Shown here piece after piece: positions 18,932 to 33,587 of a stretch of DNA of 64,000 nucleotides. Every line of letters starts with the position of its first letter. Position 1 is the stretch's first letter. The notes below the pieces were generated by a model that was not told where the DNA came from, made no database searches, and was given only the letters and a program-made list of their open reading frames with translations. The position numbers and the translations under genes are program-made. The stretch spans positions 1 to 64,000 of the IMG/VR virus record IMGVR_UViG_3300035183_000733, one strand, 5' to 3'.

Positions 18932-18932
18932 G

Positions 18933-19876: not shown

Positions 19877-19951
19877 GTCTCGATAGTATAGCGGCAATTA
19901 TACAACGGTCTCTAAAACCGATAGACATGGGTTCGAATCCCATTCGAGGCA
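19877..19951 (+). tRNA. amber suppressor tRNA(CUA)
   Basis: GTCTCGA/TCGAGGC acceptor; CGGT-CT-CTA-AA-ACCG. Confidence 0.9.
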
Positions 19952-20017
19952 CTTTTTTATAGTTTGGTGTCACAGGGAAAAAGAAGCAGAATTAAGAAAT
20001 AAATTAAAACAAAAGCC

Positions 20018-20041
20018 ATGAAGTAGAACAAGCCACCGTAA
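20018..20041 (+). promoter_or_regulatory. MK(amber)NKPP minigene leader
   Basis: AAAACAAAAGCC-ATG AAG TAG, same context as 19254. Confidence 0.55.
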
Positions 20042-20139
20042 GTCGGTTGTCAAAAGAATGAGGGAGACGTTCGCAAACCCGAACCGTTCATAAACGTGAA
20101 CGCCGAGAAATAGCGAACACAACTATAAAACTCAAAACA

Positions 20140-20487
20140 ATGACAACAATGACAACAACAAAAGTTGAGGCAACGCCTCAGAACATCAATGACGCCGTAG
20201 TGCGCATAGCAGAGTACGCCAAAGCAAAGGGGTACCAATTCAACGAATCGGAAGTGCCCTTCCGCGAGCAGAACATCGCGTTCTGGCAGGGCAGGAAATA
20301 CAGGTTCCTGCACTACCTCTGGAGACACGTGATGAAGATGGACGGTCAGTCGCCAAGGGTGGAGTACTCGGAGAGAGAACAGAAGATCAAGGCCGCGCGA
20401 AAGGCCTGGAAGGCCGCTCAGGCGGAGGCGGAGAAGCTCCAGAAGGAGTACAAGGAGATTAAAGGGGACTTCTACAAGTCCAAGTAA
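20140..20487 (+). CDS. hypothetical protein, basic helical C-terminus
   Basis: ORF followed by terminator hairpin ~20490-20514. Confidence 0.75.
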   Translation: MTTMTTTKVEATPQNINDAVVRIAEYAKAKGYQFNESEVPFREQNIAFWQGRKYRFLHYLWRHVMKMDGQSPRVEYSEREQKIKAARKAWKAAQAEAEKLQKEYKEIKGDFYKSK

Positions 20488-20608
20488 CAAAAAGGGACCC
20501 GCAGGTCCCTTTCTCTTCGATATATAAATAAATTTAGAAATCTTCCTAAATGGAGCACCTGATGGAATTCGAATCCTTCAAGAAGTAAATCACAAAACAA
20601 CACAGACA

Positions 20609-20830
20609 ATGGAGAAACCTGTACTCTATTCACTGCCGTGCGGATCTTGCGGCACACTCGAATCGCTCAAGGTAACGGAACTCGGTCACGTAATGGCCAG
20701 GTTCAGGATAGAGGAGGACGGGCACTCCAGGTGGATAAATTACGGCGTCGCGATGGTCGACGACTTGCTTGCGACTAAGAAGATCTTCAACACAAAGAGC
20801 TGGAATAATGAGGAAGTTACAAGGGTTTGA
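20609..20830 (+). CDS. small hypothetical protein
   Basis: CxxC motif. Confidence 0.6.
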   Translation: MEKPVLYSLPCGSCGTLESLKVTELGHVMARFRIEEDGHSRWINYGVAMVDDLLATKKIFNTKSWNNEEVTRV

Positions 20831-21053
20831 TAAGTTCGGTATAAACGAGGACGATGACCAGGAGCTTTTGGCGAAGCTGAGTCTTCCCGTCGAGGACAGG
20901 ACAGACGAACTGACCGGTATTGCCGAGGAAGTATCCAAGCGCGTCGATTACGAGTCCGACCTCGCGAGGTACATCTGCTACAAGATGCTCGCTGATTGCA
21001 ACGACCACGAGCTGGCGCTTAAATTCCTGCGCCTGTGCAACGAAGTAAAATGA
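20808..21053 (+). CDS. small protein with targeting-like leader
   Basis: MRKLQGFDKFGINE. Confidence 0.55.
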   Translation: MRKLQGFDKFGINEDDDQELLAKLSLPVEDRTDELTGIAEEVSKRVDYESDLARYICYKMLADCNDHELALKFLRLCNEVK

Positions 21054-21544
21054 GACATGTTAAGACATATAAGGTTTTCGAAGCCGAGTACGACGTATTT
21101 GCGAACAAGGCTGGCGAGGATTTTTGGGGCGATACTGGGGCCGGAATACTACCCATTTGCAGAGCAACTGGGAGAGTACTGGTTACCTACCGCTCTAAAT
21201 ACGTTAACGAACCTCACTCGTGGGGCGTCGTCGGCGGTAAGCTCGACGACGGCGAGACGGATGTTAAGGATGCTGCGAAGCGGGAGCTCCAGGAGGAACT
21301 GGGGTACGAAGGAGAATTCGAGCTCGTGCCGGCGTATGTATTCAAGAGTCAGGGCGGCGGGTTCGAGTACCACAACTTCATCGGGGTGGTGGAAGAGGAG
21401 TTCGAACCGACGTTAGACTGGGAAACGGAGAAGGCGAAGTGGGTGACGCTCGACGAGCTGATGAAACTTAGGCCGAAGCACTTCGGACTTGAGACGCTGA
21501 TCAAGAACAGCGGTGATATAATTAGGAAGTATGCAATTAAATAG
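21050..21544 (+). CDS. NUDIX hydrolase with targeting-like leader
   Basis: GGKLDDGETDVKDAAKRELQEELG Nudix box; MRHVKTYKVFE. Confidence 0.9.
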   Translation: MRHVKTYKVFEAEYDVFANKAGEDFWGDTGAGILPICRATGRVLVTYRSKYVNEPHSWGVVGGKLDDGETDVKDAAKRELQEELGYEGEFELVPAYVFKSQGGGFEYHNFIGVVEEEFEPTLDWETEKAKWVTLDELMKLRPKHFGLETLIKNSGDIIRKYAIK

Positions 21545-22181
21545 TTTGCATGTCAATCCATCTTTCTTTAGACAGATCTAAACCGTGAGGTTCGAGTTCA
21601 AGTCTCACCTCGCTTATCAACTTTCTATATTCGTCCGCATAGAACCTATCATAAAATTCTATTCCAGAATTTTCCACAAGAGCAGCTTTGCGTAGATCGT
21701 TGTAGTTGAATTTGTAAAGATGTCTTTCGAGTTTGGCATTAGCTTTCACCCACGCTTGGAATGCGTCATTGTTCCTGACCATCCCATAAAATTTACCATC
21801 GCTTATAACATACGCGTTTATCAGATACCAGCCATCCTTTCTGAAGCTACTAAGTGAATATATGGATATGGATGTAGAGTTCTTTACATCGACATATTCT
21901 ATCAACATCGTGTTGCTGTTAACGAAACACAGGTCCCCATTTATGTGGTTGATATTTATAGAATCCATATTATTCTCATCAACGTCCGGAGTGAACCAAA
22001 CCCCTTTGTTGCCAATAGCCTGGCGTTTGAATGCCTCCATGGCGACCTTCTCCCCGTTCTTGCCATAAACTATACGGCCATTCTCCCCGTGCTTTTCCGA
22101 TAAATTGAACGTCCCTACGTAGAGACCGAGCCTTTCCAAAATATTCATATCAGTTTGAATTTTATTATTATATTTGTCCAA
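21537..22181 (-). CDS. AT-rich hypothetical protein
   Basis: 214-aa ORF, visibly lower GC than flanks. Confidence 0.65.
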   Translation of the reverse strand: MDKYNNKIQTDMNILERLGLYVGTFNLSEKHGENGRIVYGKNGEKVAMEAFKRQAIGNKGVWFTPDVDENNMDSININHINGDLCFVNSNTMLIEYVDVKNSTSISIYSLSSFRKDGWYLINAYVISDGKFYGMVRNNDAFQAWVKANAKLERHLYKFNYNDLRKAALVENSGIEFYDRFYADEYRKLISEVRLELEPHGLDLSKERWIDMQTI

Positions 22182-22195
22182 TCAATTAAGTTGCG

Positions 22196-22678
22196 ATGGA
22201 ACTATCACCACACACAGATAAGAAGATATACTGGGAGCATAAGCTCACCGAGCTCTTGAACAAGGACAACCAGGACGGCTCTACCGTACACTTCGAGTAC
22301 GAGCGGATAAACCAGATCGACAACATCTTCAAGCCGAAGCTCACACCGCGCCGCATGGTCCCGATGACCCATACATACGCGCTAAAGGTCAAGACATATA
22401 ACCCCAAGAAGGACGTAATGTTCCTGCTCGTGGAAACAACAGGCAAGAACGAGGGCACTTGCGCGGAGGACGCGTACCAGGAGCTCATACGCATGAGGAA
22501 CCAACAGGGGTACTCCAGCTACACGCTCGAGTGGGGCAAGAAGAACGCGACGAGCACCGGCATCCAGACGTCGTACTTCTTCGCGGCGAACGAGTTCGAG
22601 GTCCTCACCAAGTTCTACTCCGATATGGGGCCGGAGAACGTGGTGTTCTATTCATTGAAGATAAATCCAATAAGCTAA
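22196..22678 (+). CDS. hypothetical protein
   Basis: 160-aa ORF. Confidence 0.7.
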   Translation: MELSPHTDKKIYWEHKLTELLNKDNQDGSTVHFEYERINQIDNIFKPKLTPRRMVPMTHTYALKVKTYNPKKDVMFLLVETTGKNEGTCAEDAYQELIRMRNQQGYSSYTLEWGKKNATSTGIQTSYFFAANEFEVLTKFYSDMGPENVVFYSLKINPIS

Positions 22679-22679
22679 T

Positions 22680-23056
22680 ATGGGAGCAGACGCGCACGCA
22701 TACCTATACCTCGGCGTTAAGTTCGAGGAAGACGTTGATGTGCAGGAGTGCAGGAGTACGATCTCCACGATCCGAAGACCGGGCAGAAGACCGGGCAGGG
22801 CCAAGAGAAGACCAAGTTATTCGTGAACCTCCACACGAAGGAGAAATTTGTCGGCGCCGATAGGTACGACCTGCCGACCGAGAACCTCACGCACGGGTTG
22901 CAGCAGGAATCGGATGACTACATCATTGGGGTAACCGTCGTCAGGATAAGTGAGTCGAACGGTGGATATGAAGAGGTCGACCCCAAAGACCTCGAGAAGG
23001 CGAGAGCCGAGTTCGAGCAGAAAGTCCGCCCGTTCTGCGGGGGATCTCGTGCCTAA
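22680..23056 (+). CDS. hypothetical protein (frameshift near 5' end)
   Basis: ATG 22680 joins ORF 22748-23056. Confidence 0.5.
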
Positions 23057-23138
23057 ATTAGTGTTGAACCTTTACTGGAGTTACTGATGCTGTTAAAGGT
23101 AAGGTGCTAACGTGTGTTCCTGAAATATCAAAGAAAGG

Positions 23139-23375
23139 TTAGTTCAGCCGGTAGTTCTTCCCTTTATCATTGGGGTTTTGTGGTTTAAGCGGGGCCGTCT
23201 TCGATAGTCTTCTGCCGAATTCAGTCATAGACATAGGGACTAACCACATAACGCAGAAGCCAAACTTAACTGCGGTCAGATTCTTGCCTCTCTCTACGCC
23301 CAGTCCTCTCCAAGGACCGAAGTCGAATGCTATTGTGTACATGGCATGACCGGGTTTAATTTTCGGAGCGCCCAA
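23139..23375 (-). CDS. small hypothetical protein
   Basis: 78-aa ORF. Confidence 0.45.
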   Translation of the reverse strand: MGAPKIKPGHAMYTIAFDFGPWRGLGVERGKNLTAVKFGFCVMWLVPMSMTEFGRRLSKTAPLKPQNPNDKGKNYRLN

Positions 23376-23489
23376 ATCTCCTTATACTATATATCTGCAA
23401 TAAGCGCACCGAGTCGTGTTTATACACAGCCACTTAATAAGCAAAGCCGGCCATTTAAAAGATATATAAACAAAATAAAATGCTTAGCT

Positions 23490-23900
23490 ATGCTTTTACA
23501 AATTCTACCTTTGGCCGGACAAATCAGAGACACAGTCGCTACTGCTGCGTCGCAGGGTAGGGGTCTTGAGATAGAACACCTCAACATAGACATACCTGAG
23601 CTGCAGCCCCTTCACTGGATCCTGGCGTACACGGGCCTCGCTGTGCACTTACTGCTGAAGATGGCGGAAACGCCCGGCGGATTGCTCGATGGGTTCACGA
23701 AGAAGGACGTGCTGATAACTCTTGCGTCCATACTCGCCATACCGGCAATACTCATCGTCTGCACGGACACCAGCCTGCGCGAGCTGTTGCCCATCAACTA
23801 TGTTACGGCATTCCTTGCCGGATACCAGACGCAGTCGTTATTGAGGACGTTCGGTGCGATCGGCGGAAAGTACATGGACAAGGCGTCCAAACAGCCGTAA
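23490..23900 (+). CDS. small multi-pass membrane protein (holin-like topology)
   Basis: 3 hydrophobic helices; GATATATA at 23461; terminator after. Confidence 0.65.
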   Translation: MLLQILPLAGQIRDTVATAASQGRGLEIEHLNIDIPELQPLHWILAYTGLAVHLLLKMAETPGGLLDGFTKKDVLITLASILAIPAILIVCTDTSLRELLPINYVTAFLAGYQTQSLLRTFGAIGGKYMDKASKQP

Positions 23901-24105
23901 GCAACGGAAATAAATTGGGAAGCCCGCATCGCTGCGGGCTTTTTATTTGTATAATCGTAGTGTTACCACGTCGCGCTGATAGAAAGCGGCCTCGGAAATA
24001 AAACGAGAAAATTCTGCCATAGAGAAAAAATATTTCTAATTTTGTGAAACATTTTATACTCGGGCGAATATATAGGGTAAGTGAATGTTTGTTCATTGAT
24101 TTATT

Positions 24106-24241
24106 GGGGAAGTAGCCAAACGGTAAAGGCACAAGTCTGTTAAAACTTGCAACACGTACAAAACCATAACGTTACTCTACTTTCTATTGAAAGAACTAAA
24201 TGTTATTTCAGTATCTGGAGGTTCGAATCCTTCCTTCCCCA
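24106..24241 (+). ncRNA. Tyr-like tRNA scaffold with TTCAGTA module in the variable arm
   Basis: GGGGAAG/CTTCCCC acceptor, T arm, 8-nt anticodon loop CTGTTAAA, ~60-nt insert. Confidence 0.75.
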
Positions 24242-24368
24242 CTTTGTTAGTTCATTGATATTTTGAAATTTGATTGGTCGTAAGACGGACAGACAAACAC
24301 ACGCCGCTACGAAAGTAGAATGAATCCTCGGAAGCGTACCGGGCTGTCCCAAGACAGATCAGATAAAT

Positions 24369-24507
24369 GGGGGAGTAGCTAAGTAAGTTACACACCTAAC
24401 GCTACTCTACTCTGGCAACAGAGAACTATGGCGATAGTTCAGTACAAGGTAAAGCAATTGTTTTGGATAACAATCAACCGCTGGTTCAACTCCAGCCTCC
24501 CCCACCA
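24369..24507 (+). ncRNA. tRNA scaffold (Gln-like) with TTCAGTA module in the D loop, encoded CCA
   Basis: GGGGGAG/CTCCCCC-ACCA; insert between AGCTAAGT and GGTAAAGC; distorted anticodon loop. Confidence 0.75.
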
Positions 24508-24530
24508 CTTTAAAGTTCTTTTACAAAATA

Positions 24531-24725
24531 TTGGAAGTAACTCTTCCACAAGCAAAGAGAGAAACTTGGCGAGTTTTCAGTAAAATTAGCTCAACTGGAA
24601 GAGCGTTTGCCTACTAAGCAGAATGTTGCGGGTTCGACTTCCGTATTTTATACCTAACAATTCGCTTCCATATCTCTCCCACACTGCCGATTAAACGGCA
24701 CAGGAGACTAAGTGCACCTTCAGTA
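24531..24725 (+). ncRNA. Arg-like tRNA scaffold (anticodon ACT, 24580-24652) flanked by two TTCAGTA modules
   Basis: cloverleaf GTAAAAT/ATTTTAT; TTTGC-CT-ACT-AA-GCAGA; modules end at 24582 and 24725. Confidence 0.7.
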
Positions 24726-24798
24726 ACAATCTTCGGATGATACCACGGGACACTAAAAACTCCGAACCATTACCCTGGTCGAGCAATCGGTCGGGGTT

Positions 24799-25248
24799 TT
24801 GTTTTTAATGAATAAACCGATGACGATAGAACAAAGAATAACACCAGAAGACATCACCGCGGACTACGTGCTCGCGGGCTGCGGAGCCTTGTGCTTCCTG
24901 TTTGGGTCTAACAAGTCCGGCATACACGGAGGTGGCGCAGCCAACTTCGCGCACAAGGAACTTGGGGCTGAGTGGAGCGTGGCGTTCGGTCCTACCGGTT
25001 ACTGCTTCGCGTTGCCGACTAAGGACTTCAACGTCGTCGACACGCTGCCCGTATCGGAAATAAAGACGTACGTCGACGGGTTCATCGAGCATGCCAGGCT
25101 GACGCCAGGTGTCCGATACCTCGTCACGGAGATAGGCTGCGGGCTCGCCGGCTATGAGCCTAAAGACATTGCGCCGTTGTTCGAAGCCGCGGTGTCAGTG
25201 GACAACATAAGTTTACCACAGAGGTTCTGGGAAATTCTCGGGGGATAG
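24799..25248 (+). CDS. macro-domain-like phage protein (A1S_2505-like)
   Basis: FLFGSNKSGIHGGGAA...FALPTK...VTEIGCGLAG. Confidence 0.7.
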   Translation: MFLMNKPMTIEQRITPEDITADYVLAGCGALCFLFGSNKSGIHGGGAANFAHKELGAEWSVAFGPTGYCFALPTKDFNVVDTLPVSEIKTYVDGFIEHARLTPGVRYLVTEIGCGLAGYEPKDIAPLFEAAVSVDNISLPQRFWEILGG

Positions 25249-25352
25249 TATTCTACATTGTAGGAAATATGAAGCCGGGATTTTCGTCTCGGCTTTTTTT
25301 ATTTTTAGTAATTTCGTTACCTCAGATAAAGATAAAAGAAATAAACAATATC

Positions 25353-26984
25353 ATGAAAGACCTAATAGTATCGAACAAGCAGCTACCTACCATAAAGGAA
25401 GGTATCGTGAAAGGACTCGAAGTTGCAAGCGGCGCGAGATCGTCTGCCACTTACTATCACAAGAAGGGAGAGATGCAAGTCGCAGTTCGCAACTCAGTTA
25501 CGAACTTGTACCAGATAAGCAAGGAGCTCCCATTGTTGCTCGCCGTTCAACACGGGGCAACCGGGTTCTTCATTCAGGAGGCCATCATGAACGAGCTGAA
25601 GCAGACCGAAAAAGGAGGCGCGTGTAATATCGTCAACCCTTCGGACTGGTACGACGAGGGCTTTGGCCAGCACCTGTTGCTTCACGCGCTGTACAACCTC
25701 GATACTGAGGCGGGCATCACATACGTGCTCCGCATGTTCACGCAGTACCGCGATAACAAGATAAACAACGCTCGTGCGAGGAAACTTGCTCTACGTTTCA
25801 TCTGGGGACACCCGAACCTCGAGTTCATCTCCGTGAAATACCGCGGAAAGCTAAGGGAGATCTTGTCGCACGTTTACGGCAAGAAGGTCGCCTATGGAAT
25901 TCTCAAGGCGAGCAAGCGCTACGTCGAGGCCGGTATATTCGACAACGACAAGTCTCGTAAACTGTTGCAGAAGAATATGGCGAGGTTCACGGACAACCTC
26001 GAGCGCTCGGCAAGGATATACATGTTCATATTCGGAAGCGCGAGGAAGGATCACTTCGACGCGTCTTTCAAAATCATAACTCAGTTCTTCGGCGCGCGCC
26101 AAGACATCTTCGGCGCAACTTCGGTTCCCGAGGAGATTCTCGTCGGCATCATCGGCGACAAGTCTCACCCTCAGTACCGCGAGTTCTGGGGTTCCAAGGA
26201 GAAGCGTCAGGACACGCTCAAGCGTATCCGCGAGCGCAACGTTGTCACCACGGCCAACCAGCAGGTTCGTCAGACCAAGAAGAACCAGGAGCTCGGCGTG
26301 ACTAAAGAGGTCGACCTGAAGAAGGTCACGGATTTCCTCGCGTTGTACAAGACCGGATACGAGACGGGATTCGTTCCCGCGCTCAACGAGGCCATTGAGG
26401 ACCTTGCAGGCAAGCGCAGATTGGTCGGATTCGCGTACCAGAACATCGGTATTGTCCTCGACAGGAGCGCGTCCATGACAGGACACAAGCAGGAGTCCAA
26501 GAACACACCACGCGCCATCGCCGAATTCACGGCGCTCGTTCTGCGCAAGTCGGTTAACACTGCCGACGTTGCCATGACCGCTGCCGGTGACAACTCGGAC
26601 ATCGCGTCCGCGTTCCTTGAGTTGGTGGATTCGGATAAGAACTACGAGGCGATATTCATCATCTCGGACGGATACGAGAACAGCTATGACGGATTGCTCA
26701 ACGAGGTGATCAAGGCCTGGAGGGACATGACCGAATCGGCAACGCCGATCTACCACATCTCCCCTGTTGTCGGGGCGGAACTCAATGCCAAAGTTCGCTC
26801 TATGGGCAACCAAATCTCCACCATCGCGGTCAACAGGCCGGAGGCGCTCAACGCTCAGATAAGCGCGAAGCTACTCGAGCAGGACACTAAGCGCTGGCTG
26901 GAGAACCAGTTCCGCATGCTGTCCGAGCAGGTGTCTAAGAGGGCATCTAAATTAAACGCAAACAAAGAAACAGAAACAAGATAA
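25353..26984 (+). CDS. helical N-terminus + C-terminal VWA protein (TROVE/Ro60-like architecture)
   Basis: VLDRSASM MIDAS, IISDGYEN; large alpha-helical N-terminal region. Confidence 0.6.
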   Translation: MKDLIVSNKQLPTIKEGIVKGLEVASGARSSATYYHKKGEMQVAVRNSVTNLYQISKELPLLLAVQHGATGFFIQEAIMNELKQTEKGGACNIVNPSDWYDEGFGQHLLLHALYNLDTEAGITYVLRMFTQYRDNKINNARARKLALRFIWGHPNLEFISVKYRGKLREILSHVYGKKVAYGILKASKRYVEAGIFDNDKSRKLLQKNMARFTDNLERSARIYMFIFGSARKDHFDASFKIITQFFGARQDIFGATSVPEEILVGIIGDKSHPQYREFWGSKEKRQDTLKRIRERNVVTTANQQVRQTKKNQELGVTKEVDLKKVTDFLALYKTGYETGFVPALNEAIEDLAGKRRLVGFAYQNIGIVLDRSASMTGHKQESKNTPRAIAEFTALVLRKSVNTADVAMTAAGDNSDIASAFLELVDSDKNYEAIFIISDGYENSYDGLLNEVIKAWRDMTESATPIYHISPVVGAELNAKVRSMGNQISTIAVNRPEALNAQISAKLLEQDTKRWLENQFRMLSEQVSKRASKLNANKETETR

Positions 26985-26987
26985 GTC

Positions 26988-28076
26988 ATGGTAAATTTCA
27001 AAGACCTACTAAAGGGATGCAGGCTGCACAAAGATGCGGACGGCAACATAATCGTTCAGTCAATCCTGAACATGCAGCTGGTTTGTCTGACCACCGACAG
27101 TGAGTTCAGCCACAACAAGTTCGCTAACCCTATGGACGTGCTTGGTTCTAACCAAAGATACGGGCACCTCAACCTTACCAACCCCGAGAACAAGGACATG
27201 ATAGTCCCTGCTCAGATAGCCGTTCTCACCAAGCAGAGCGCGCAGAACCACGGGATGGTGAAGGCCGCGTACATCCCGTCGAAGTCGAGATCCGACTTCT
27301 ACGACGCTGGGTGTGTGCAGGGATCGCAGCCCGGTTACATCCGCGCTAACAAGAACGACCAGGAGATCCGTTTCCTTCCGTTTGGTGTGCGCGAGTACAT
27401 CTGGAACAAGGTGAACAAGACCGGTAGCCACGATAACATCTACGCAGCCATCGACAAGGTTGGTCGCGATACTGGAGCTAACTCCGGAACGTATATCGAC
27501 CAGTACTTCAAGAAGTTCGATAAGGAGATAAACGAGTTCATCGCGCACTTCGAGCGCCCGAAGAACACCATCGGCACCATCGTGCTCATCGACGGTGAGA
27601 TAATCGCCATCGACAAGTTCCCGAGCTTCGAGTACTGCGAGCAGGTGTGGGACGCGCTGATACGCGACTGCTACGGTGCCATTGCCATTACGCAGGAAAG
27701 GCAGGGCAAGAAGGCCCAGTCACTGTTCACCGAGAACATGTCTAAGCAGAAGCGCAAGGCAAACGAATCGCCGGCAGCGTACCTGAAGAGGATCATGACT
27801 TCCACCAAGAAGTCTATCGAGGACAACGTGCGCGCTAAGCTTGAGGAAATTCTCGAGCTCAGCTTCAGCGAGAGGCAGGACACCGACCTCAATGGCCAGA
27901 ACGGGTACACATCTAAGATCCTCACCGCGGAGGGCTACATAGGACAGAAGATTTCCGAGTCCAACTACCACCACCTGGTGTCTGTTGTGCGCAAGGAGTC
28001 GTTCGACCCGGAGCGTTTCCGCAAGGCAAACGAGATGCGCTCGAAAGCGAGCAAGCAGAGGGGATTCGAGATTTAA
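26988..28076 (+). CDS. ARPP-1/DUF6569-like protein
   Basis: L.N...AQNH...GCVQG; IGTIVLIDGEIIAIDKF...WDALIRDCY. Confidence 0.6.
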   Translation: MVNFKDLLKGCRLHKDADGNIIVQSILNMQLVCLTTDSEFSHNKFANPMDVLGSNQRYGHLNLTNPENKDMIVPAQIAVLTKQSAQNHGMVKAAYIPSKSRSDFYDAGCVQGSQPGYIRANKNDQEIRFLPFGVREYIWNKVNKTGSHDNIYAAIDKVGRDTGANSGTYIDQYFKKFDKEINEFIAHFERPKNTIGTIVLIDGEIIAIDKFPSFEYCEQVWDALIRDCYGAIAITQERQGKKAQSLFTENMSKQKRKANESPAAYLKRIMTSTKKSIEDNVRAKLEEILELSFSERQDTDLNGQNGYTSKILTAEGYIGQKISESNYHHLVSVVRKESFDPERFRKANEMRSKASKQRGFEI

Positions 28077-28317
28077 GAATAGGGTTGTAAGTCCGCACAC
28101 CCACCAGGTAGTCTCGCGGAGTAGCTTGAGTTCCAACTGCGGAACGTGAGGCGGATGGAGCCTGGTAGTACACAAGAAGGTAACCGTGATAAAGGCGCGT
28201 GGCCGATACACCAGTCACGCATCGTGGAACAAAAGCGGTGAAGATATTGTTAGGACATCGGAACCGGAAAAACCGCCGGTCTAACTGAACCATCATGTAG
28301 TGCGGAGAAGGTATTGG

Positions 28318-28347
28318 AGGCGACAGGAAACTGTCGCCTTCTTCATT
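28318..28347 (+). terminator. intrinsic terminator
   Basis: GGAGGCGACAG-GAAA-CTGTCGCCTT then T-rich. Confidence 0.65.
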
Positions 28348-28381
28348 TACAAAATACTCATTTTTCACTTATCTTCGGTAC

Positions 28382-30214
28382 ATGATCGCCGATAATGATA
28401 ATACGCAGATGGAAGAGCAACGCGATGTTGCCGAGGGCGAACAGACCAGGACGGAGGCTGTTGACAACGTGAGGCGACAGCTCGAGGAAATGGTAATGTA
28501 TGAGCCCATAACCGCCACCAACGTTGCGGCGGCGATAGAACTGGCCAGGATTAGCGGCAGCGATACATCCGAACTACGCGCCTTACAAACAACATCATCG
28601 GCAACCTCCGAGTGGGTCTCTATGGAATCGTACGGGGGCGGATACGAATCCGGCCTCGACGATTGGAACAACATTGGCACCGCGGAACCGCAGCCGGTGC
28701 GAGAGGATACCGAGGAGGAGAAAGCGGCCAAGTTCGCCGAGCGGCTCCGACTCGCCGAGGAACTGAAGATTAAAGTATTAAAAACAAAATCGAGGAAAAT
28801 GTCAAGAACACGCACCGTAATACTGGAAGAGATAGCCACCAGCGTCATCAACAACGTAGACAGCGCGCTTGCATCCATAACCGAGCAATCGACCCACGAA
28901 AATTTCGTGAGCTACTTGAGCTACTTGTCCGAGTATATGGACCGGTGCGACACGCACATAGATAACCAGATAAGCAAGGAACAGCTGAAGAAGAAGAAGC
29001 TTGCCGAGTCTATGCTTAGGAATAAGCCGGACATGCGGTCGAAACTGTTCTGTCCGATGGGGATAGAGTACACGTACCATCCAAAGATCAGAAGACCAAA
29101 AATAAAAGAATCTGCTATAAGCGAGAATTCCAGACTAAACAACATAGCCTACGCGGGCGGTAATATAAAGTTCAGGACCTACACAATGACTTTGGATTTA
29201 GATGGATCTCCAAGATTTACTCCTAATCAAATAGAATCCACGGAACAGACCACACCAGAGAACACGGAACGTCAAGAAATACCTGATGACTTATTGTCTG
29301 CGAAGCTTGCTACAGAGGATCCAGTCGCGGAGGAACAACCACAGGAGCCAGAGCCGGTGGCACCTAACCCCAATTACGAGCCATCTGTATTCTCCCGCGG
29401 GAATAGACGAGATACATTGGACAAAATAGTGACGAGGATATTGACGAGGATAAATGAAGTCAAGCGGGCCACCGGTCTCTATCCGGAGGCAAGGGTATAC
29501 GCGGACAACGGCGTCGTAGAGGTGTGCTCTCCGGTGCACCGAGACTGGAAGTCCATGCGAGAATGGTACAGGTGGATGGTGAACGAGCTCGGCTCCTCTG
29601 TGACTGTCATAAACAAGAAGAAGGGTAGCGGTGGCGGACACATCAACTGCGCCATGCCAAAAAAACTGAAGGAGAAGTTCATGTACAACCTGCTCGTGGA
29701 CATCGGCAACAGGCCGTACCTCAACTGGATATTCAATGACCCGAGCGATAACCACACAGCCAACTGCATGTGGGACTCTAAGGATATGCAGCGCATCTAC
29801 GAGCACGTACACAAAAACAAAGAGAAGTGGGACGCCGACGACAGCGACTTCATAAGTACCTTGGGCGAACTGATAACTCTCACCAACTCAAGAGGCTTCG
29901 CCATCAGAGTGAAATCTGAATACCACTTCGAGTTCAGGTGTTTCGACGCCATAAGAAACGAGCGGGACCTCGAGGACATTGTCATATTCGTTAGTGAGTA
30001 CATGCGCAGCATATACTCCATGACAGTAGCGGGTAACATGTTTGACAGCATCGGTGGGACCACGGATGACCTCCCGAATTTTGCGGCCACTGCCCGGACA
30101 GATTTCAACAGGCTGCTGCGGAAAATTGGGCTCGATCCGGAAAATTACCGCAGGTTCATCGACCGCAATTTCGAGGTTCGGCGGAAAGTTTATGGAAAAA
30201 ATAACCTCATTTGA
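28382..30214 (+). CDS. putative amidoligase (COOH-NH2 ligase) with acidic N-terminal extension
   Basis: VEVCSPV, GGGHIN, FEFRCFD; alternative start at ATG ~28800. Confidence 0.55.
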   Translation: MIADNDNTQMEEQRDVAEGEQTRTEAVDNVRRQLEEMVMYEPITATNVAAAIELARISGSDTSELRALQTTSSATSEWVSMESYGGGYESGLDDWNNIGTAEPQPVREDTEEEKAAKFAERLRLAEELKIKVLKTKSRKMSRTRTVILEEIATSVINNVDSALASITEQSTHENFVSYLSYLSEYMDRCDTHIDNQISKEQLKKKKLAESMLRNKPDMRSKLFCPMGIEYTYHPKIRRPKIKESAISENSRLNNIAYAGGNIKFRTYTMTLDLDGSPRFTPNQIESTEQTTPENTERQEIPDDLLSAKLATEDPVAEEQPQEPEPVAPNPNYEPSVFSRGNRRDTLDKIVTRILTRINEVKRATGLYPEARVYADNGVVEVCSPVHRDWKSMREWYRWMVNELGSSVTVINKKKGSGGGHINCAMPKKLKEKFMYNLLVDIGNRPYLNWIFNDPSDNHTANCMWDSKDMQRIYEHVHKNKEKWDADDSDFISTLGELITLTNSRGFAIRVKSEYHFEFRCFDAIRNERDLEDIVIFVSEYMRSIYSMTVAGNMFDSIGGTTDDLPNFAATARTDFNRLLRKIGLDPENYRRFIDRNFEVRRKVYGKNNLI

Positions 30215-30258
30215 GGGAAAAATTTTCACAATTATGTTCACGATTCAAAAAAAGCTCG

Positions 30259-30266
30259 TACATTTG
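30259..30266 (+). promoter_or_regulatory. Bacteroidota housekeeping promoter -7 element TAnnTTTG
   Basis: TACATTTG; also ~17791, 31869, 42081, 46514, 51892. Confidence 0.65.
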
Positions 30267-30298
30267 TATCGTTAAATAATAAACAAAGTTCAGAAACT

Positions 30299-30475
30299 AT
30301 GGCAAAAACAGCTAAAAAGTCGACAGCAAAAAAAGCTAAGGCTACTAAAAAAGCAAAGCCTGCGGCTAAGAAAGCTGCGGTAAAGAAAACTGCTAAACCT
30401 GCGAAGAAGAGCACGCCGAAGGCGAAGGCTACTCCGAAGGCTGAGCCAGCGAAGAAGGAAACTTCACCTCGCTAA
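30299..30475 (+). CDS. 58-aa histone H1-like Lys/Ala/Pro-rich protein
   Basis: MAKTAKKSTAKKAKATKKAKPAAKKAAVKKTAKPAKK...; below ORF-track cutoff. Confidence 0.75.
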   Translation: MAKTAKKSTAKKAKATKKAKPAAKKAAVKKTAKPAKKSTPKAKATPKAEPAKKETSPR

Positions 30476-30650
30476 GCTCAAAAAGGTTGTGTGACGTCGC
30501 TGAGGGAACCCAGTGGACACAGAGGATTATCGTTCCATTCCAGATTGACCATCCTCAAGCAACACTCTCCTGAAAACTGGCGTACGCCCGGAGCAATCCG
30601 GGCCGCGGCCAAGCTGAGTCTCTTAGCCCCCTAAGGCTCAGCGGAACATT

Positions 30651-30777
30651 TGTCGAGTACAACTGGAGGTCAAGCGCTGATCAAAGGTGGTCCTGACGGG
30701 AAGCAGCAGTCTAATTAACTGCTGGAGCCCGATCAAACTCAGCAAAGGAAGTGCGGGTTCGAATCCCGCCTCGACGG
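30651..30777 (+). ncRNA. enlarged tRNA-like RNA (127 nt)
   Basis: TGTCGAG/CTCGACG acceptor, GCGGG-TTCGAAT-CCCGC T arm, multi-hairpin interior. Confidence 0.6.
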
Positions 30778-30958
30778 CAGTGCAAGAACTACGGTGAACA
30801 TGGGTTCGTCCCTCCGCCGTAGTTTTTAAAAATGAATTAAAAACCGAAACAATTCGGGATATATAGAGTATAAAGATAAGATTGTTCTACCTTATTCCCA
30901 ACAAATGGCAGATATACAAACAGGGACTTGCCAGGTAAAATAGTCGAACTAAAAAGAC

Positions 30959-31045
30959 ATGAAGAAGTATAACGCATATCAGCAGTATAATCAAAATCAG
31001 AATCAAAGTTCTGGGCTGAGCGTTATTTCCCCATTTGAAAAGTAG
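30959..31045 (+). CDS. attenuator leader peptide (Tyr/Asn/Gln-rich, 28 aa)
   Basis: MKKYNAYQQYNQNQNQSSGLSVISPFEK*. Confidence 0.85.
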   Translation: MKKYNAYQQYNQNQNQSSGLSVISPFEK

Positions 31046-31065
31046 TAACACACTATACAACGCGT

Positions 31066-31097
31066 AAAAGGCCCAGGACAAAATCCTGGGTCTTTTT
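31066..31097 (+). terminator. attenuator terminator of the Asn/Tyr/Gln tRNA operon
   Basis: GGCCCAGGA-CAAAA-TCCTGGGTC-TTTTT. Confidence 0.85.
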
Positions 31098-31101
31098 ACT
31101 T

Positions 31102-31190
31102 GGGTGGATTACCGTAGAGGCCGAACGGTCCAGACTGTTAATCTGGTGTGACGACGAGTCCCATCGCAGGTTCGAATCCTGCTCCGCCCG
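31102..31190 (+). tRNA. tRNA-Asn(GTT), long variable arm
   Basis: CCAGA-CT-GTT-AA-TCTGG, G73. Confidence 0.9.
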
Positions 31191-31226
31191 CAAAAATAGG
31201 TCCGACACGGGTAGATAGTAAATTAT

Positions 31227-31300
31227 GGACATGTAGCTCAGCAGGTCAGAGCAGCTCACTGTTAATGAGAAGGCCGGGGGTTCGAATCCCTCCTTGTCCG
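31227..31300 (+). tRNA. tRNA-Asn(GTT)
   Basis: cloverleaf. Confidence 0.95.
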
Positions 31301-31305
31301 CAAAT

Positions 31306-31380
31306 TTCTTGGGTGAGTCGGCTGTTTATTACGCGCGCAGCTGACGGTTGGAAGAAGAGGTTCGAGTCCTCCCTAAGGAG
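31306..31380 (+). ncRNA. D-armless tRNA-like element
   Basis: TTCTTGG/CTAAGGA, GAGG-TTCGAGT-CCTC, single GTCGGCTG/CAGCTGAC arm. Confidence 0.4.
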
Positions 31381-31390
31381 CAACAAATAT

Positions 31391-31480
31391 GGGTGTACGG
31401 TCGCGACGGTGGAGCGACCCCAGTCTGTAAAACTGGGACATTTAAAGAAACGCCGGGGGTTCGAAATCCCTCTACACCCA
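31391..31480 (+). tRNA. tRNA-Tyr(GTA)
   Basis: CCAGT-CT-GTA-AA-ACTGG; 8-nt T loop. Confidence 0.85.
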
Positions 31481-31485
31481 CACAT

Positions 31486-31567
31486 TGAGGAGCGCTAACG
31501 TTGGAGAGTTAGACCAGTCTGTAAAACTGGTGCTTCGGCTGAGTGGGTTCGAATCCCATCTCCTCAA
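31486..31567 (+). tRNA. tRNA-Tyr(GTA)
   Basis: cloverleaf with class II arm. Confidence 0.9.
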
Positions 31568-31574
31568 CTTAAAT

Positions 31575-31658
31575 TGTCCGATCGCCTAATGGCATGGCGC
31601 CGGGTTTTGGCCCCGGTGGGAAGTAATTCCTGTGTAGGTTCGACCCCTGCTCGGACAA
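31575..31658 (+). tRNA. tRNA-Gln(TTG), long variable arm
   Basis: CCGGG-TT-TTG-GC-CCCGG; GGGAA-GTAA-TTCCT arm. Confidence 0.9.
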
Positions 31659-31776
31659 CAAGACATCGACAGAGGTACTCGTCCGCAGACGTGTGGAAAA
31701 GTGTGTGCTTGCGACCATTAAAGTCTCTGTGTATCCCAATAGGTAGGAAGTAATTACTCTGAATGATTGGGAATAC

Positions 31777-31849
31777 TGTCCTGTAGTGTAACTGGCAACA
31801 CGTCGGGTTTTGGCCCCGAAGATTCCAGGTTCGAACCCTGGTGGGACAA
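31777..31849 (+). tRNA. tRNA-Gln(TTG)
   Basis: cloverleaf. Confidence 0.95.
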
Positions 31850-31887
31850 CAAAACGAAATTTATTTCGTATCTTTGAAGTATTATAT

Positions 31888-31960
31888 TGTCCTGTAGTTC
31901 AACTGGCAGAGCGCCTGATTCTGGATCAGGATGTTGGAGGTTCGAACCCTCCCGGGACAA
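31888..31960 (+). tRNA. tRNA-Gln(CTG)
   Basis: CCTGA-TT-CTG-GA-TCAGG. Confidence 0.95.
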
Positions 31961-32045
31961 CATGGGAATTAAGAACAACAATTAGTAGATAGATGCTGTA
32001 ATCCTAAATACACACAAAAGACTGGTGGCGGATATATTTGGAAAT

Positions 32046-33587
32046 ATGAGCATAATAACTAAAAAAGATTCGGGGAGGGTACGCGTACGTTTCGCGCCCT
32101 CCCCTACGGGACCCCTGCACTTAGGAGGGATCAGGACCGCATTATACAACTACCTGTTTGCTAAGAAGCACGGCGGCGATTTCATACTTCGCATCGAAGA
32201 TACCGATGCGATGAGGTTCGTGCCAGGCGCCGAAGAGTATATCATCGAAGCGCTGAAGTGGTGCGGTATATCGCCCAACGAAGGCGTTGGATTTGGCGAT
32301 GGTCCGCATGCACCATACAGGCAGTCGGAGAGAAAATCCATTTACAAGGAATACGCTATTAAGCTCGTGGAGCTCGGCCATGCATACTATGCGTTTGATA
32401 CTGGGGTATCGCTCGAAGAGAGACGCGCTGTCAACAAGAATTTTATGTATAACGGGGTGACTCGCGAGTCGCTGAGAAATAGTTTGACGTTGTCTTCTGA
32501 TGAGGTGAAATCGCTATTAGACTCGGAGACGCCGTACGTTATTCGGTTTAAGATACCGCGCAACACCGAGGTCGTGGTTAACGACATAGTTCGTGGTGCA
32601 ATAAGGGTCAACACGAACACGCTCGACGACAAGGTATTGTTCAAGAGTGACGGCATGCCTACTTACCACCTGGCGAACATTGTGGATGACCATCTCATGG
32701 GGATCACCCATGTAATCCGAGGTGAGGAGTGGTTGCCGTCTGCCCCGCTGCACGTTCTTTTGTACGAGGCTCTCGAGTGGGACGCCCCAGAGTTCTGCCA
32801 CCTTGCGTTGATACTTGGGCCTAACGGCAAGATGAGCAAGCGCGACATGGATTCTCTCGGGTTCCCAGTGTACCCGCTTGATTGGACAGATCCCAACACG
32901 GGGGAAAAGGCATCCGGATACCGTGAGATGGGATTCCTACCGGAAGCGTTCATCAACATGCTTGCGTTCATCGGATGGAACCCCGGCAACGGCAAGGAGA
33001 TAATGGGTCTCGACGAGATGGCAGAGGTGTTCGACCTCAGGAAGGTTCAGAGAGCTGGTGCCAAGTTCGACCCAAAGAAGGCGGAGTGGTACAGCAAGGA
33101 GTACATGAGGGTCGCTGACGACGCCGTGCTCGTCGAGAAGTGGATACCGGATCTGTGGGATAACGTTGATAAAAGCATTCCGCTTTCTCGCGTTTCTTCC
33201 GAGTACCGCACGAAGGTCGTCCACTTACTGAAGGAGAAGGTGGCATATCTCGGAAAGTTTTGGGAGAACGGCAGTTACTTCTTTATTGATCCAACCGATA
33301 TGTCGGTGCTCGATGAGTTGGCCGCGTCTAATGATAAGGTAACTCCGTTTATATTAAGCATGATGTCTAAGCTGATCGCCGATGATGTATTCGATATGAC
33401 TACCACTAAGGCTTGCTTTGATTCTGCCATAGCAGAATCCGGCATTGAGCCGCGCGAGGCCGGTAAGGCATTGCGTGCTGCAGTTTGCGGCAACAAAGTG
33501 GGGCCGCCGATGTTCGACATATTGGTGGTGCTCGGAAAGAACACCACGTTGTCTCGTCTTAAGAACTGCGCAACTGCACGAAGCTAA
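32046..33587 (+). CDS. gltX: glutamyl-tRNA synthetase
   Basis: RFAPSPTGPLHLGG, LRIEDTD, HVIRGEEW, KMSKR. Confidence 0.95.
   Translation: MSIITKKDSGRVRVRFAPSPTGPLHLGGIRTALYNYLFAKKHGGDFILRIEDTDAMRFVPGAEEYIIEALKWCGISPNEGVGFGDGPHAPYRQSERKSIYKEYAIKLVELGHAYYAFDTGVSLEERRAVNKNFMYNGVTRESLRNSLTLSSDEVKSLLDSETPYVIRFKIPRNTEVVVNDIVRGAIRVNTNTLDDKVLFKSDGMPTYHLANIVDDHLMGITHVIRGEEWLPSAPLHVLLYEALEWDAPEFCHLALILGPNGKMSKRDMDSLGFPVYPLDWTDPNTGEKASGYREMGFLPEAFINMLAFIGWNPGNGKEIMGLDEMAEVFDLRKVQRAGAKFDPKKAEWYSKEYMRVADDAVLVEKWIPDLWDNVDKSIPLSRVSSEYRTKVVHLLKEKVAYLGKFWENGSYFFIDPTDMSVLDELAASNDKVTPFILSMMSKLIADDVFDMTTTKACFDSAIAESGIEPREAGKALRAAVCGNKVGPPMFDILVVLGKNTTLSRLKNCATARS

What the first reader, a model, noticed from the sequence alone, without database searches (positions are those of the whole stretch)
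24799..28076. Macro-like + VWA/TROVE-like + ARPP-1 operon downstream of the RNA array
SEEN: a macro-fold-like gene, a 543-aa helical+VWA (MIDAS DRSAS) gene and a DUF6569/ARPP-1-like gene, directly after the tRNA-mimic array. A hairpin + T-tract (~24755-24805) lies between the array and the genes. KNOWN: Ro60 is a TROVE+VWA ring that binds Y RNAs and is linked to RNA repair. INFERENCE: a ribonucleoprotein RNA-repair or counter-defence module, possibly autoregulated by binding the repeated leader motif. The TROVE and ARPP-1 calls are from recalled motif similarity only.
Basis: inference. Interest (0 to 1): 0.72.

Follow-up and report, generated by a model that had tools for sequence, protein, structure and literature searches.

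The report
Ro60-like protein pair with tRNA-mimic RNAs
A huge phage encodes a very divergent Ro60-like ring protein, a tightly coupled enzyme-like partner (ARPP-1) and, just upstream, tRNA-mimicking RNAs with a conserved stem; the same trio recurs in about 140 phage and bacterial loci, so it is probably an undescribed relative of the Ro60/Y-RNA particle.

Summary
Three + strand genes follow the RNA array.

- **g1 (24808-25248):** a macrodomain by fold, closest to TARG1 and DarG. It belongs to NCBIfam A1S_2505.
- **g2 (25353-26984):** no Pfam family. The model is a helical ring plus a VWA domain with a full MIDAS motif. Its best structural matches are all Ro60/TROVE (Z 12-15 over about 400 residues).
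- **g3 (26988-28076):** Pfam ARPP-1, E 1e-14.

It is not one operon. Terminator-like hairpins follow the array, g1 and g3.

The conserved unit is g2+g3. g3 follows g2 in 76 of 79 phage loci and in 56 of 62 bacterial loci. One natural fusion protein joins both. g1 occurs only in the closest relatives.

Upstream of g2, 81 of 88 phage loci carry 2-5 copies of a 25-nt motif. In this 374-kb genome the motif occurs only here. It is the 5' strand of a two-part stem that encloses tRNA-like modules. In relatives the modules have the YrlA-like permuted order, with strong covariation. Window unit 1 is the circular permutation of that RNA.

Best reading: a Ro60/Y-RNA-like particle with ARPP-1 docked on the MIDAS face. 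RNA binding and chemistry are untested. I rate it a new variant of a known kind.

The parts
24106..24241 (+). RNA unit 1: a tRNA-like element (acceptor stem, D arm, anticodon-like arm, T arm) with a capped two-part stem of about 65 nt inserted before the T arm. Motif copy 1 is at 24189-24213. Inner helix: 24166-24173 with 24199-24206. Outer helix: 24180-24184 with 24189-24193.
   Evidence: Rfam tRNA 47.8 bits with a long insert. ARAGORN with the intron option. The MFE keeps the acceptor, D, anticodon and T stems. It is a circular permutation of the L065-type unit: 107/136 identical after rotation, score 45 against -8.5 unrotated and <=8 for shuffles.
24370..24508 (+). RNA unit 2: a second tRNA-like element, with the capped two-part stem inserted after the 5' acceptor strand. 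Motif copy 2 starts at about 24418. The element ends in CCA.
   Evidence: Repeat family D3. Regex hit at 24422. The MFE shows the two-part hairpin, the T arm and the closing acceptor stem, z -2.8. Homologous elements occur in L086, L088 and L089.
24557..24678 (+). RNA unit 3: a Y-RNA-like arrangement. The 5' strand is the outer helix 24557-24562, AACU, the inner helix 24568-24575 and UUCAGUA. It encloses a tRNA-like body (24580-24654, anticodon-like ACU). The 3' strand is the inner helix 24659-24666, an internal loop and the outer helix 24673-24678.
   Evidence: ARAGORN and Rfam tRNA hit at 24580-24654. Motif hit at 24562. The MFE of 24556-24704 forms both helices around the D, anticodon and T arms.
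24772..24807 (+). Terminator-like hairpin plus T-tract that ends the RNA array unit.
   Evidence: Read directly.
24808..25248 (+). g1: macrodomain protein of the A1S_2505 family (146 aa from the ATG at 24808). It is a lineage-specific neighbour and not part of the conserved module.
   Evidence: Present only in L088 (92%) and L086 (52%). Absent from 79 phage loci and 62 bacterial loci.
25271..25296 (+). Terminator-like hairpin between g1 and g2.
25353..26984 (+). g2: Ro60/TROVE-like helical ring plus a C-terminal VWA domain with a MIDAS motif (D370, S372, S374, D439). 543 aa.
26988..28076 (+). g3: ARPP-1 domain protein (362 aa), the obligate partner of g2.
   Evidence: Pfam match. Adjacency in 76/79 phage and 56/62 bacterial loci. 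Natural fusion P0383. Predicted docking on the MIDAS face. Invariant residues include D16, Q86, H88, C109, H187, E189 and C228.
28316..28341 (+). Terminator-like hairpin that ends the g2-g3 unit.

Best explanation
The core is a conserved module of two genes and an RNA. g1 is not part of it.

**Proposed particle.** g2 is a very divergent Ro60-like protein: a helical ring closed by a VWA domain. g3 (ARPP-1) is its fixed partner and most likely docks on the metal-binding (MIDAS) face of the VWA domain. The RNA array just upstream encodes tRNA mimics. Each carries the same two-part stem: an outer helix, an AACU-containing internal loop, an inner helix, then UUUACAGUAA.

I propose that g2 binds this stem as Ro60 binds the conserved stem of Y RNAs. 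The tRNA-like module would recruit or imitate tRNA substrates. ARPP-1 would be the catalytic or effector subunit, acting on RNA ends or on ADP-ribose-type sugar adducts. The particle would then work in tRNA/RNA surveillance or repair during infection.

**g1.** The macrodomain, and the NUDIX gene upstream, are lineage-specific additions with the same ADP-ribose theme.

**Shown:**
- the folds of g1 and g2;
- the g2-g3 gene pairing and the natural fusion;
- the RNA structure and its covariation;
- the co-occurrence of the motif with the pair in phages and bacteria.

**Inferred:**
- RNA binding by g2;
- g3 docking (weak support only);
- the enzymatic chemistry;
- the biological role.
For: **g2 fold.**
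- Foldseek PDB ranks 1-13 are all Ro60/Rsr/TROVE, E 2e-5.
- VIA-align gives Z 12.4-15.0 with 392-406 residues aligned across residues 16-523.
- ESM Atlas nearest named clusters, by features and by structure, are TROVE/vWA_Ro60, with TM up to 0.72/0.82.
- hhalign against genuine TROVE proteins gives probability 95%, E 1.7e-8, over the last helix plus the VWA domain.

**g2-g3 pairing.**
- g3 follows g2 in 76/79 IMG/VR loci. The three exceptions end at the contig edge.
- The usual gap is 11 nt.
- 56/62 bacterial loci have the pair.
- P0383 is a single 884-aa protein joining a g2-like part and ARPP-1.
- Complex prediction scores ipSAE 0.56 against a best control of 0.00, verdict 'weak support'. 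The interface is the MIDAS residues 372-374 and 439-448 against g3 residues 16-28 and 186-189.

**RNA link.**
- The motif occurs 2-5 times on the + strand within 3 kb upstream of g2 in 81/88 loci. Only 3 of 235 copies lie downstream and 18 lie on the minus strand.
- The core has a fixed 22-nt length in 149/160 distinct copies.
- In the 374-kb genome it occurs only at this locus.
- Strict two-part complementary partners exist for 63/166 copies, against 0-7 in 20 shuffles.
- In alignment A7, 34 pairs are 99.1% paired, against 40-51% when slid. 21 pairs show compensatory changes.
- The order T arm, acceptor stem-loop, D arm inside a 5'/3' stem is the order reported for YrlA (PMC4201824).
- Bacterial loci carry a variant of the motif upstream of g2 in 34/48 cases.

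**Context.**
- Remote locus L097 has the pair beside Macro, RNase_T and RtcB genes, with 13 tRNAs.
- Bacterial copies sit in same-strand tRNA arrays: 425 same-strand tRNAs and 0 on the opposite strand.
Against: - No Pfam TROVE match for g2 or for 45 diverse relatives.
- Profile-profile similarity covers only the VWA end of the protein.
- Foldseek TM-scores to solved Ro60 are only 0.3-0.43. A helical repeat plus VWA could be convergent.
- Rfam YrlA and Y RNA models do not hit these RNAs. I did not see the GNCGAA Ro-binding motif of bacterial Y RNAs.
- The complex prediction is formally 'weak support'.
- There is no expression or binding data. The laid runs looked like DNA.
- The sequences in alignment A7 were chosen for perfect pairing of helices 1 and 2. 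Only helices 3-6 are unbiased there.
- The phage has no RtcB, so a repair pathway is not complete in this genome.
Confidence: 0.6

Rival explanations
1. g2+g3 is a protein-directed ADP-ribose system: a VWA peptide-binding co-chaperone with an ARPP enzyme, as proposed for the ARG-centred host systems. The neighbouring RNAs would only reflect hitch-hiking inside mobile tRNA arrays, not a physical partnership.
For: ARPP was defined in ADP-ribosylglycohydrolase-centred neighbourhoods that also hold vWA, Macro and NADAR genes (PMC9503650). Here a macrodomain (g1) and a NUDIX gene (21035-21544) lie nearby. Long tRNA arrays are known to be horizontally mobile (PMC8421152).
Against: - The motif is not a general feature of tRNA genes. 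The other 20 tRNAs of this genome lack it.
- It keeps a fixed position and strand upstream of g2 in distant phage clades and in bacteria, even where only 1-3 tRNA-like genes are present.
- The N-terminal 340 residues of g2 model as a Ro-like ring and not as a plain VWA protein.
- Phages with canonical Ro60 lack ARPP-1, so the pairing is specific to this family.
Confidence: 0.15
2. The pair is a maturation machine for these unusual RNAs. The 25-nt motif would be a processing signal: cleavage near CA|GUA, ligation or circularisation. That could explain why the same RNA exists in permuted and unpermuted gene orders. g3 would be the nuclease or ligase-like enzyme and g2 the RNA clamp.
For: The 3' edge of the motif coincides with the 5' end of tRNA-like bodies in many units. 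Permuted and unpermuted versions of one RNA exist. ARPP-1 has invariant Cys, His, Glu and Gln residues that suggest catalysis.
Against: No nuclease or ligase fold has been shown for ARPP-1. The stems covary as stable structure rather than as a transient substrate. M. smegmatis YrlA is processed by the ordinary RNase P and CCA-adding enzyme, so no dedicated machine is needed.
Confidence: 0.15
3. One reading: a three-gene macro+TROVE+ARPP operon that regulates itself by binding the repeated leader motif.
For: The three genes are adjacent, on the same strand and share a theme. g1 is kept in the two closest relatives.
Against: Terminator-like hairpins lie between the array and g1 and between g1 and g2. 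g1 is absent from 79 phage and 62 bacterial loci that keep g2+g3 and the RNA motif. There is no motif copy in the g1 or g2 leaders.
Confidence: 0.07

Closest known systems
Ro60 (Rsr)/Y RNA ribonucleoproteins, including bacterial Rsr-YrlA and phage Ro60 with Y-RNA-like genes upstream (Thermus phage phiLo, mycobacteriophages, CcrColossus, Bacillus phage G)
   Same: - A helical ring plus a VWA domain with a MIDAS motif.
- Small structured RNAs encoded just upstream on the same strand.
- RNAs built from a conserved 5'/3' stem with an internal loop plus a tRNA-like module.
- In relatives the module has the same permuted order as YrlA: T arm, acceptor stem-loop, D arm.
   Different: - No Pfam TROVE match.
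- The RNAs do not match the Rfam Y/YrlA models and carry a different conserved motif: GRARAACU...UUUACAGUAA instead of GNCGAA.
- An obligate ARPP-1 partner, which the canonical Ro60 phages G and CcrColossus lack.
- Arrays of 2-5 RNA units.
- Both permuted and unpermuted RNA gene orders.
- Bacterial copies are embedded in long tRNA arrays.
ARPP-containing, ARG-centred ADP-ribose conflict systems (Iyer, Burroughs, Anantharaman, Aravind 2022, PMC9503650)
   Same: The same ARPP-1 domain with conserved Cys and Gln. vWA, Macro and Nudix domains occur in the wider neighbourhoods.
   Different: No ARG and no rhodanese-phosphatase gene here. The partner is a Ro-like ring-VWA protein. The paper lists two-gene ARPP contexts with HIRAN, WYL and a deacetylase, not with a TROVE-like protein. 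The link to tRNA-like RNAs is not mentioned there.
[quoted passage not shown]
   Same: tRNA-like or tRNA genes are linked with RNA surveillance and repair genes. Remote relative L097 carries RtcB, RNase T and Macro beside the pair.
   Different: This phage has no RtcB. The L-array paper, as far as I searched it, does not describe this gene pair.
TARG1/DarG-type macrodomains (for g1)
   Same: Full-length fold match, Z about 12. In other proteins the A1S_2505 domain is fused to ADP-ribosylglycohydrolase, PARG, NUDIX and VWA domains.
   Different: No Pfam Macro match. Catalytic residues were not mapped. No DarT-like toxin gene lies next to it.

Membership tests
Ro60/TROVE (Pfam PF05731) | Significant match to the TROVE sequence model | tested here: not met
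   No hit at E<=1 for g2. No TROVE hit in 45 diverse family members. No hit in the whole genome at E<=0.1, while the control genomes were found.
Ro60/TROVE (Pfam PF05731) | Architecture: alpha-helical (HEAT-like) ring closed by a C-terminal VWA domain | tested here: met
   On a predicted model (pLDDT 79): the top 13 PDB hits are Ro60. Z is 12.4-15 over about 400 residues spanning both domains. Atlas TM is 0.55-0.72 to TROVE clusters. Ring closure itself could not be inspected.
Ro60/TROVE (Pfam PF05731) | VWA domain with a MIDAS motif, related to the Ro60 VWA | tested here: met
   DRSAS at 370-374. D370, S372, D439 are invariant and S374 nearly so across 45 distant relatives. hhalign to genuine TROVE proteins gives probability 95.4%, E 1.7e-8, over 120 columns.
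Ro60/TROVE (Pfam PF05731) | Binds an adjacent Y-type RNA | not testable with these tools
   Only co-occurrence was shown.
YrlA / bacterial Y RNA | Match to the Rfam covariance models, and the GNCGAA Ro-binding motif | tested here: not met
   No Y RNA or YrlA hit at E<=0.1 in window 18000-33000, nor at E<=1 in five relatives' loci. I did not see the motif in the units I read.
YrlA / bacterial Y RNA | 5'/3' stem with an internal loop enclosing a tRNA-like domain in the order T arm, acceptor stem-loop, D arm; encoded next to the Ro-like gene | tested here: met
   Met in relatives (alignment A7). In the window, unit 3 has the stem around an unpermuted tRNA-like body. Unit 1 is the circular permutation.
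ARPP-1 (Pfam PF20208) | Match above the gathering threshold | tested here: met
   E 1.3e-14, 54.7 bits against 27, profile positions 51-268 of 297. Confirmed on the genome.
ARPP-1 (Pfam PF20208) | Absolutely conserved Cys and Gln reported for ARPP | tested here: inconclusive
   C109, C228, Q86 and Q219 are invariant in the phage family. I did not map them onto the residues meant in PMC9503650.
Macrodomain | Pfam Macro sequence match | tested here: not met
   No Pfam hit. A profile search against PDB gives only E 0.6-0.95 to macrodomain chains.
Macrodomain | Macro fold | tested here: met
   Model pLDDT 92.5. TARG1 Z 12.5 and DarG Z 12.2, full length, rmsd 2.5-3.2 A. Nearly all of the top 50 hits are macrodomains.
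Macrodomain | ADP-ribose binding or hydrolysis | not testable with these tools
   Not assayed. Domain fusions to ARG, PARG and NUDIX in other proteins are suggestive.
Known anti-phage defence systems (PADLOC) | Match to a defence-system protein model | tested here: not met
   No hit for g1, g2 or g3.

The most novel reading that the evidence does not exclude
A widespread, undescribed ribonucleoprotein family in huge phages and in Planctomycetota, Myxococcota and Bacteroidota. Its parts would be:
- a cryptic Ro60-like ring;
- an ARPP-1 enzyme held on the ring's MIDAS site;
- modular tRNA-mimic RNAs that exist in both circularly permuted and unpermuted gene orders.

The module is embedded in, or next to, tRNA arrays. 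It would sense or repair damaged or sugar-modified tRNA ends. For a phage that would be counter-defence against tRNA-targeting immunity. This reading would give ARPP-1 its first substrate class and give the Ro60 MIDAS site its first ligand.
Probability: 0.35. Interest if true: 0.88.

Novelty: new variant of a known kind. Interest (0 to 1): 0.8.

Why it matters
- **Ro60 MIDAS site.** Ro60/Y-RNA particles are conserved from bacteria to humans, yet the role of the Ro60 MIDAS site is unknown. Here a Ro-like protein has a fixed partner that is sometimes fused to it and is predicted to dock on that site.
- **ARPP-1.** ARPP-1 has no known activity. A stable link to tRNA-like RNAs points to nucleic-acid ends as its substrate.
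- **RNA gene evolution.** The RNAs show the same molecule encoded in two circular permutations, which is a rare and clean case.
- **Testability.** The module marks long tRNA arrays in bacteria, whose function is still debated, and the tRNA islands of huge phages. It occurs in cultivable bacteria such as Stieleria, Novipirellula, Rhodopirellula and Minicystis rosea, so it can be studied genetically.

Tried and rejected
- **Phage megablast** with 24000-30300: no match.
- **PDB sequence searches** for g2, as a single sequence and as two profiles: nothing below E 0.4.
- **PADLOC:** nothing for the three genes.
- **ARPP-2 (PF22549)** looked at first like a name for the g2 family. It overlaps the ARPP-1 region of the fusion protein and is a paralogue of g3, not of g2.
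- **The motif as a simple hairpin (ACUG/CAGU):** rejected. Position 6 varies without a matching change at position 17.
- **The motif as a promoter:** unlikely. It lies inside covarying RNA structure, it is limited to this locus, and sigma-70-like boxes precede the arrays in L007 and L015 (read).
- **First partner search with one mismatch allowed:** uninformative in AT-rich DNA, since shuffles scored almost as well. I replaced it with the strict test.
- **First bacterial motif regex:** too narrow. I replaced it.
- **Sequencing runs:** the two runs labelled RNA-Seq look like DNA, so there is no expression or RNA-end information.
- **The spacer 24245-24372:** it folds no better than shuffles, z 0.04.
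- **g4 as part of the module:** rejected. It is absent from 79 of 79 loci.
Full report
**Setting.** The window is the first 64 kb of a 373,759-bp IMG/VR virus record that CheckV rates complete, so this is a huge phage. The same DNA is held by microbial-mat metagenome runs. ARAGORN finds 23 tRNA genes, all on the + strand. Two of them have a CUA anticodon.

**The observation.** All three ORFs are present.

g1: the TTG at 24799 overlaps the T-tract of a terminator-like hairpin at 24772-24797. The ATG at 24808 is therefore the likely start.

g2: the 571-aa ORF would begin inside a second terminator-like hairpin at 25271-25296. The 543-aa reading from 25353 is therefore right. It carries DRSAS at residues 370-374.

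g3: it starts 3 nt after the g2 stop. A further terminator-like hairpin lies at 28316-28341.

The layout is therefore four consecutive units and not one operon: the RNA array, then g1, then g2-g3, then g4.

**g1.** It has no Pfam family. It matches phrog_2072 at E 3e-34 and NCBIfam A1S_2505_Nterm at E 4e-36. More than 3,300 homologues were found.

An AF2 model built on 30 sequences has pLDDT 92.5. By VIA-align its best matches are TARG1 (Z 12.5) and DarG macrodomains (Z 12.2). They cover the full length at 2.5-3.2 A. Nearly every other hit is also a macrodomain.

In the ESM Atlas the same domain is found fused to ADP-ribosylglycohydrolase, PARG, NUDIX and VWA domains. The macro-like call therefore holds by fold, and an ADP-ribose-related role is plausible.

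**g2.** It has no Pfam, PHROG, NCBIfam or PADLOC family. The only trace is a VWA_2 hit at E 0.12. The family is nonetheless large: more than 367 close homologues and 445 clusters at 50% identity in an exhaustive profile search.

The AF2 model (pLDDT 79) has about 20 helices followed by an alpha/beta domain. The structural comparisons all point the same way:
- Foldseek against PDB puts Ro60, Rsr or TROVE structures at ranks 1-13, at E 2e-5 to 3e-3. TM-scores are only 0.3-0.43.
- VIA-align gives Z 12.4-15.0 with 392-406 residues aligned across residues 16-523. These hits sit above the plain VWA domains, which score Z about 10-13 on the C-terminal part only.
- The nearest named ESM Atlas clusters, by features and by structure, are TROVE/vWA_Ro60, with TM up to 0.72/0.82.

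At sequence level the link is weaker. The Pfam TROVE model does not match g2, 45 diverse relatives or the genome. I built a genuine TROVE alignment starting from the CcrColossus and Bacillus phage G proteins. hhalign against it gives probability 95%, E 1.7e-8, but only over the last helix plus the VWA domain.

I therefore call g2 Ro60-like in architecture, with a Ro60-type VWA domain. It is not a demonstrated TROVE family member.

**g3 and the pairing.** g3 matches Pfam ARPP-1 at E 1.3e-14. ARPP was described in ADP-ribosylglycohydrolase-centred systems as a probable enzyme with conserved Cys and Gln that acts on sugar moieties (PMC9503650).

The evidence that g2 and g3 belong together:
- g3 follows g2 in 76 of 79 IMG/VR loci. 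The three exceptions end at the contig edge.
- The usual gap is 11 nt.
- All nine contexts fetched by protein identity show the same arrangement: eight have an ARPP-1-type gene right after g2, and in one the two are fused.
- g3 follows g2 in 56 of 62 bacterial or archaeal genome loci. These are mainly Planctomycetota, Myxococcota and Bacteroidota and include complete chromosomes.
- P0383 is one 884-aa protein that joins a g2-like part to an ARPP-1 domain.
- A complex prediction with controls scored 0.56 against 0.00 for the best control. The tool's verdict is 'weak support'. The contact surface is the MIDAS face of g2 (residues 372-374 and 439-448). On g3 it includes the invariant D16 region and H187/E189.
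- Phages with canonical Ro60 (G, CcrColossus) have no ARPP-1. This genome has no canonical TROVE and no RtcB.

g1 and g4 are not part of this unit. Both are absent from 79 of 79 loci. g1 was found only in the two closest relatives, L088 and L086.

**The RNA partner.** A motif recurs upstream of g2. Its consensus is G-R-A-R-A-A-C-U, N2, U, N, G-U, K, U-U-U, W, C-A-G-U-A-A.
- Its core has a fixed 22-nt length in 149 of 160 distinct copies.
- It occurs 2-5 times on the + strand within 3 kb upstream of g2 in 81 of 88 phage loci. Only 3 of 235 copies lie downstream and 18 lie on the minus strand.
- In this 374-kb genome the search pattern hits only 24193 and 24562. A variant copy lies at 24422. None of the other 20 tRNA genes has it.

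The motif is the 5' strand of a two-part stem. I required perfect 5+7 bp pairing across a 4-8 nt internal loop. Under that test 63 of 166 distinct copies have a partner, against 0-7 in 20 shuffles. The partner lies downstream for 46 copies, enclosing 48-136 nt. It lies upstream for 17 copies, giving a capped hairpin.

The units that enclose 115-136 nt contain, in order, a T arm, an acceptor stem closed by a loop, a D arm and an anticodon-like arm. This is the circularly permuted tRNA-like layout reported for YrlA (PMC4201824).

RNAalifold on 16 such units predicts 34 pairs, 21 of them with compensatory changes. In the pair count 99.1% of cells are paired, against 40-51% when the partners are slid by 1-3 columns. 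No shuffle out of 500 reaches the observed values. One caveat applies: these sequences were chosen for perfect pairing in helices 1 and 2, so only helices 3-6 are unbiased.

The window holds three units:
- Unit 3 (24557-24678) has the two-part stem around an ordinary-order tRNA-like body. The minimum-free-energy fold shows this.
- Units 1 and 2 (24106-24241 and 24370-24508) are closed by an acceptor stem and carry the two-part stem as a capped insert.
- Unit 1 is the circular permutation of the L065-type unit. After a 56-nt rotation, 107 of 136 positions are identical. The alignment score is 45, against -8.5 unrotated and at most 8 for shuffles.

The pattern extends to more distant loci:
- Remote phage locus L097 has a variant motif (GRGGGACUU, N7, UAUUACCGAUAA) with matching 3' partners. 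The pair there lies beside Macro, RNase_T and RtcB genes.
- Bacterial loci carry another variant, for example GGACUAGCACGUCAUUACAG, upstream of g2 in 34 of 48 cases. 69 of the 117 + strand hits fall in the 900 nt upstream of g2, which is about 9% of the sequence searched.
- In bacteria the pair often sits inside long tRNA arrays on the same strand. There are 425 same-strand tRNAs and none on the opposite strand. 22 of 61 loci have five or more, and one has 39.

Rfam has no family for these RNAs beyond partial tRNA hits.

**Mechanism.** The best-supported model is a Ro60/Y-RNA-like particle. g2 clamps the conserved two-part stem. The tRNA-like module mimics or recruits tRNA-handling factors. 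ARPP-1 sits on the MIDAS face as the effector.

The context points to surveillance or repair of tRNA or RNA ends, or removal of ADP-ribose-type adducts. It includes tRNA arrays, RtcB and RNase T in a relative, and Macro and NUDIX genes here (NUDIX at 21035-21544). In a phage such a function would counter tRNA-targeting host immunity.

Only the folds, the pairing, the RNA structure and the co-occurrence are shown. Binding, chemistry and role are inferred.

**Novelty.** Ro60 with Y-like RNAs is known in phages (PMC4201824, PMC12135203, PMC7824862). ARPP is known as a domain. In the held library I found no paper that describes any of the following:
- a TROVE-like/ARPP-1 pair;
- its RNA motif;
- the permuted and unpermuted RNA forms;
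- its place in tRNA arrays.

That is absence from the library I could search. It is not proof that the combination is unpublished. I rate the finding as a new variant of a known kind.

Noticed in passing
window 19877-19952 and 42187-42258: Two tRNA genes with a CUA anticodon (amber-suppressor type, labelled 'Pyl' by ARAGORN). L086 has one as well. This hints at TAG read-through or recoding in part of this phage's genes.
   Followed up: no
window 31102-31961: A cluster of paired tRNA genes (Asn x2, Tyr x2, Gln x3). Several are unusually long (85-91 nt), and two score better as tRNA-Sec in Rfam. Relatives L086 and L088 keep the same Asn/Tyr/Gln cluster downstream of the module.
   Followed up: partly
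window 21035-21544: A NUDIX hydrolase gene (Pfam E 3e-20) lies about 3.5 kb upstream. A NUDIX gene holds the same relative position in L086, L088 and L089.
   Followed up: partly
window 28382-30214: g4 (610 aa) has no family hit. ESM Atlas features and structure point weakly to an amidoligase or glutamine-synthetase-like C-terminal half. It is present only in L088 (64%) and L086 (36%).
   Followed up: partly
L022, L023, L024, L060-L063, L073, L081 (between g2 and g3): In several relatives a 544-571-nt insertion separates g2 from g3. It could be a small mobile gene such as a homing endonuclease. A NUMOD3-type gene lies just upstream of g2 in L004.
   Followed up: no
L095:1122-3776 (protein P0383): A natural fusion of a g2-like Ro-like/VWA protein with an ARPP-1 domain in one 884-aa polypeptide.
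   Followed up: partly
L112 (Minicystis rosea CP016211, 8.26 Mb region) and other bacterial loci L099-L149: The g2+g3 pair is embedded in very dense same-strand tRNA arrays, with up to 39 tRNA genes in 11 kb. No tRNA lies on the opposite strand in any of 61 loci.
   Followed up: partly
L007-L085, 450-2000 nt upstream of g2: Most AT-rich relatives have a 'tRNA-Met(CAU)' call. It is often preceded about 40 nt upstream by a tRNA-like gene whose anticodon differs from locus to locus (Leu, Ile, Ser, Glu, Lys, Tyr, Thr, Ala, Asp, Cys, Arg, UCA, UUA).
   Followed up: partly
window 24245-24372 and 24655-24775: Two stretches of the array lie outside the three units. The first holds a GNRA-capped hairpin but folds no better than shuffles. 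The second has two hairpins (z -2.05). Their role is unknown.
   Followed up: partly
window 28077-28315: About 240 nt lie between the g3 stop and the terminator-like hairpin, with no ORF examined. In two wastewater runs the contigs replace 11 nt here (28204-28216) with 53 other letters.
   Followed up: no
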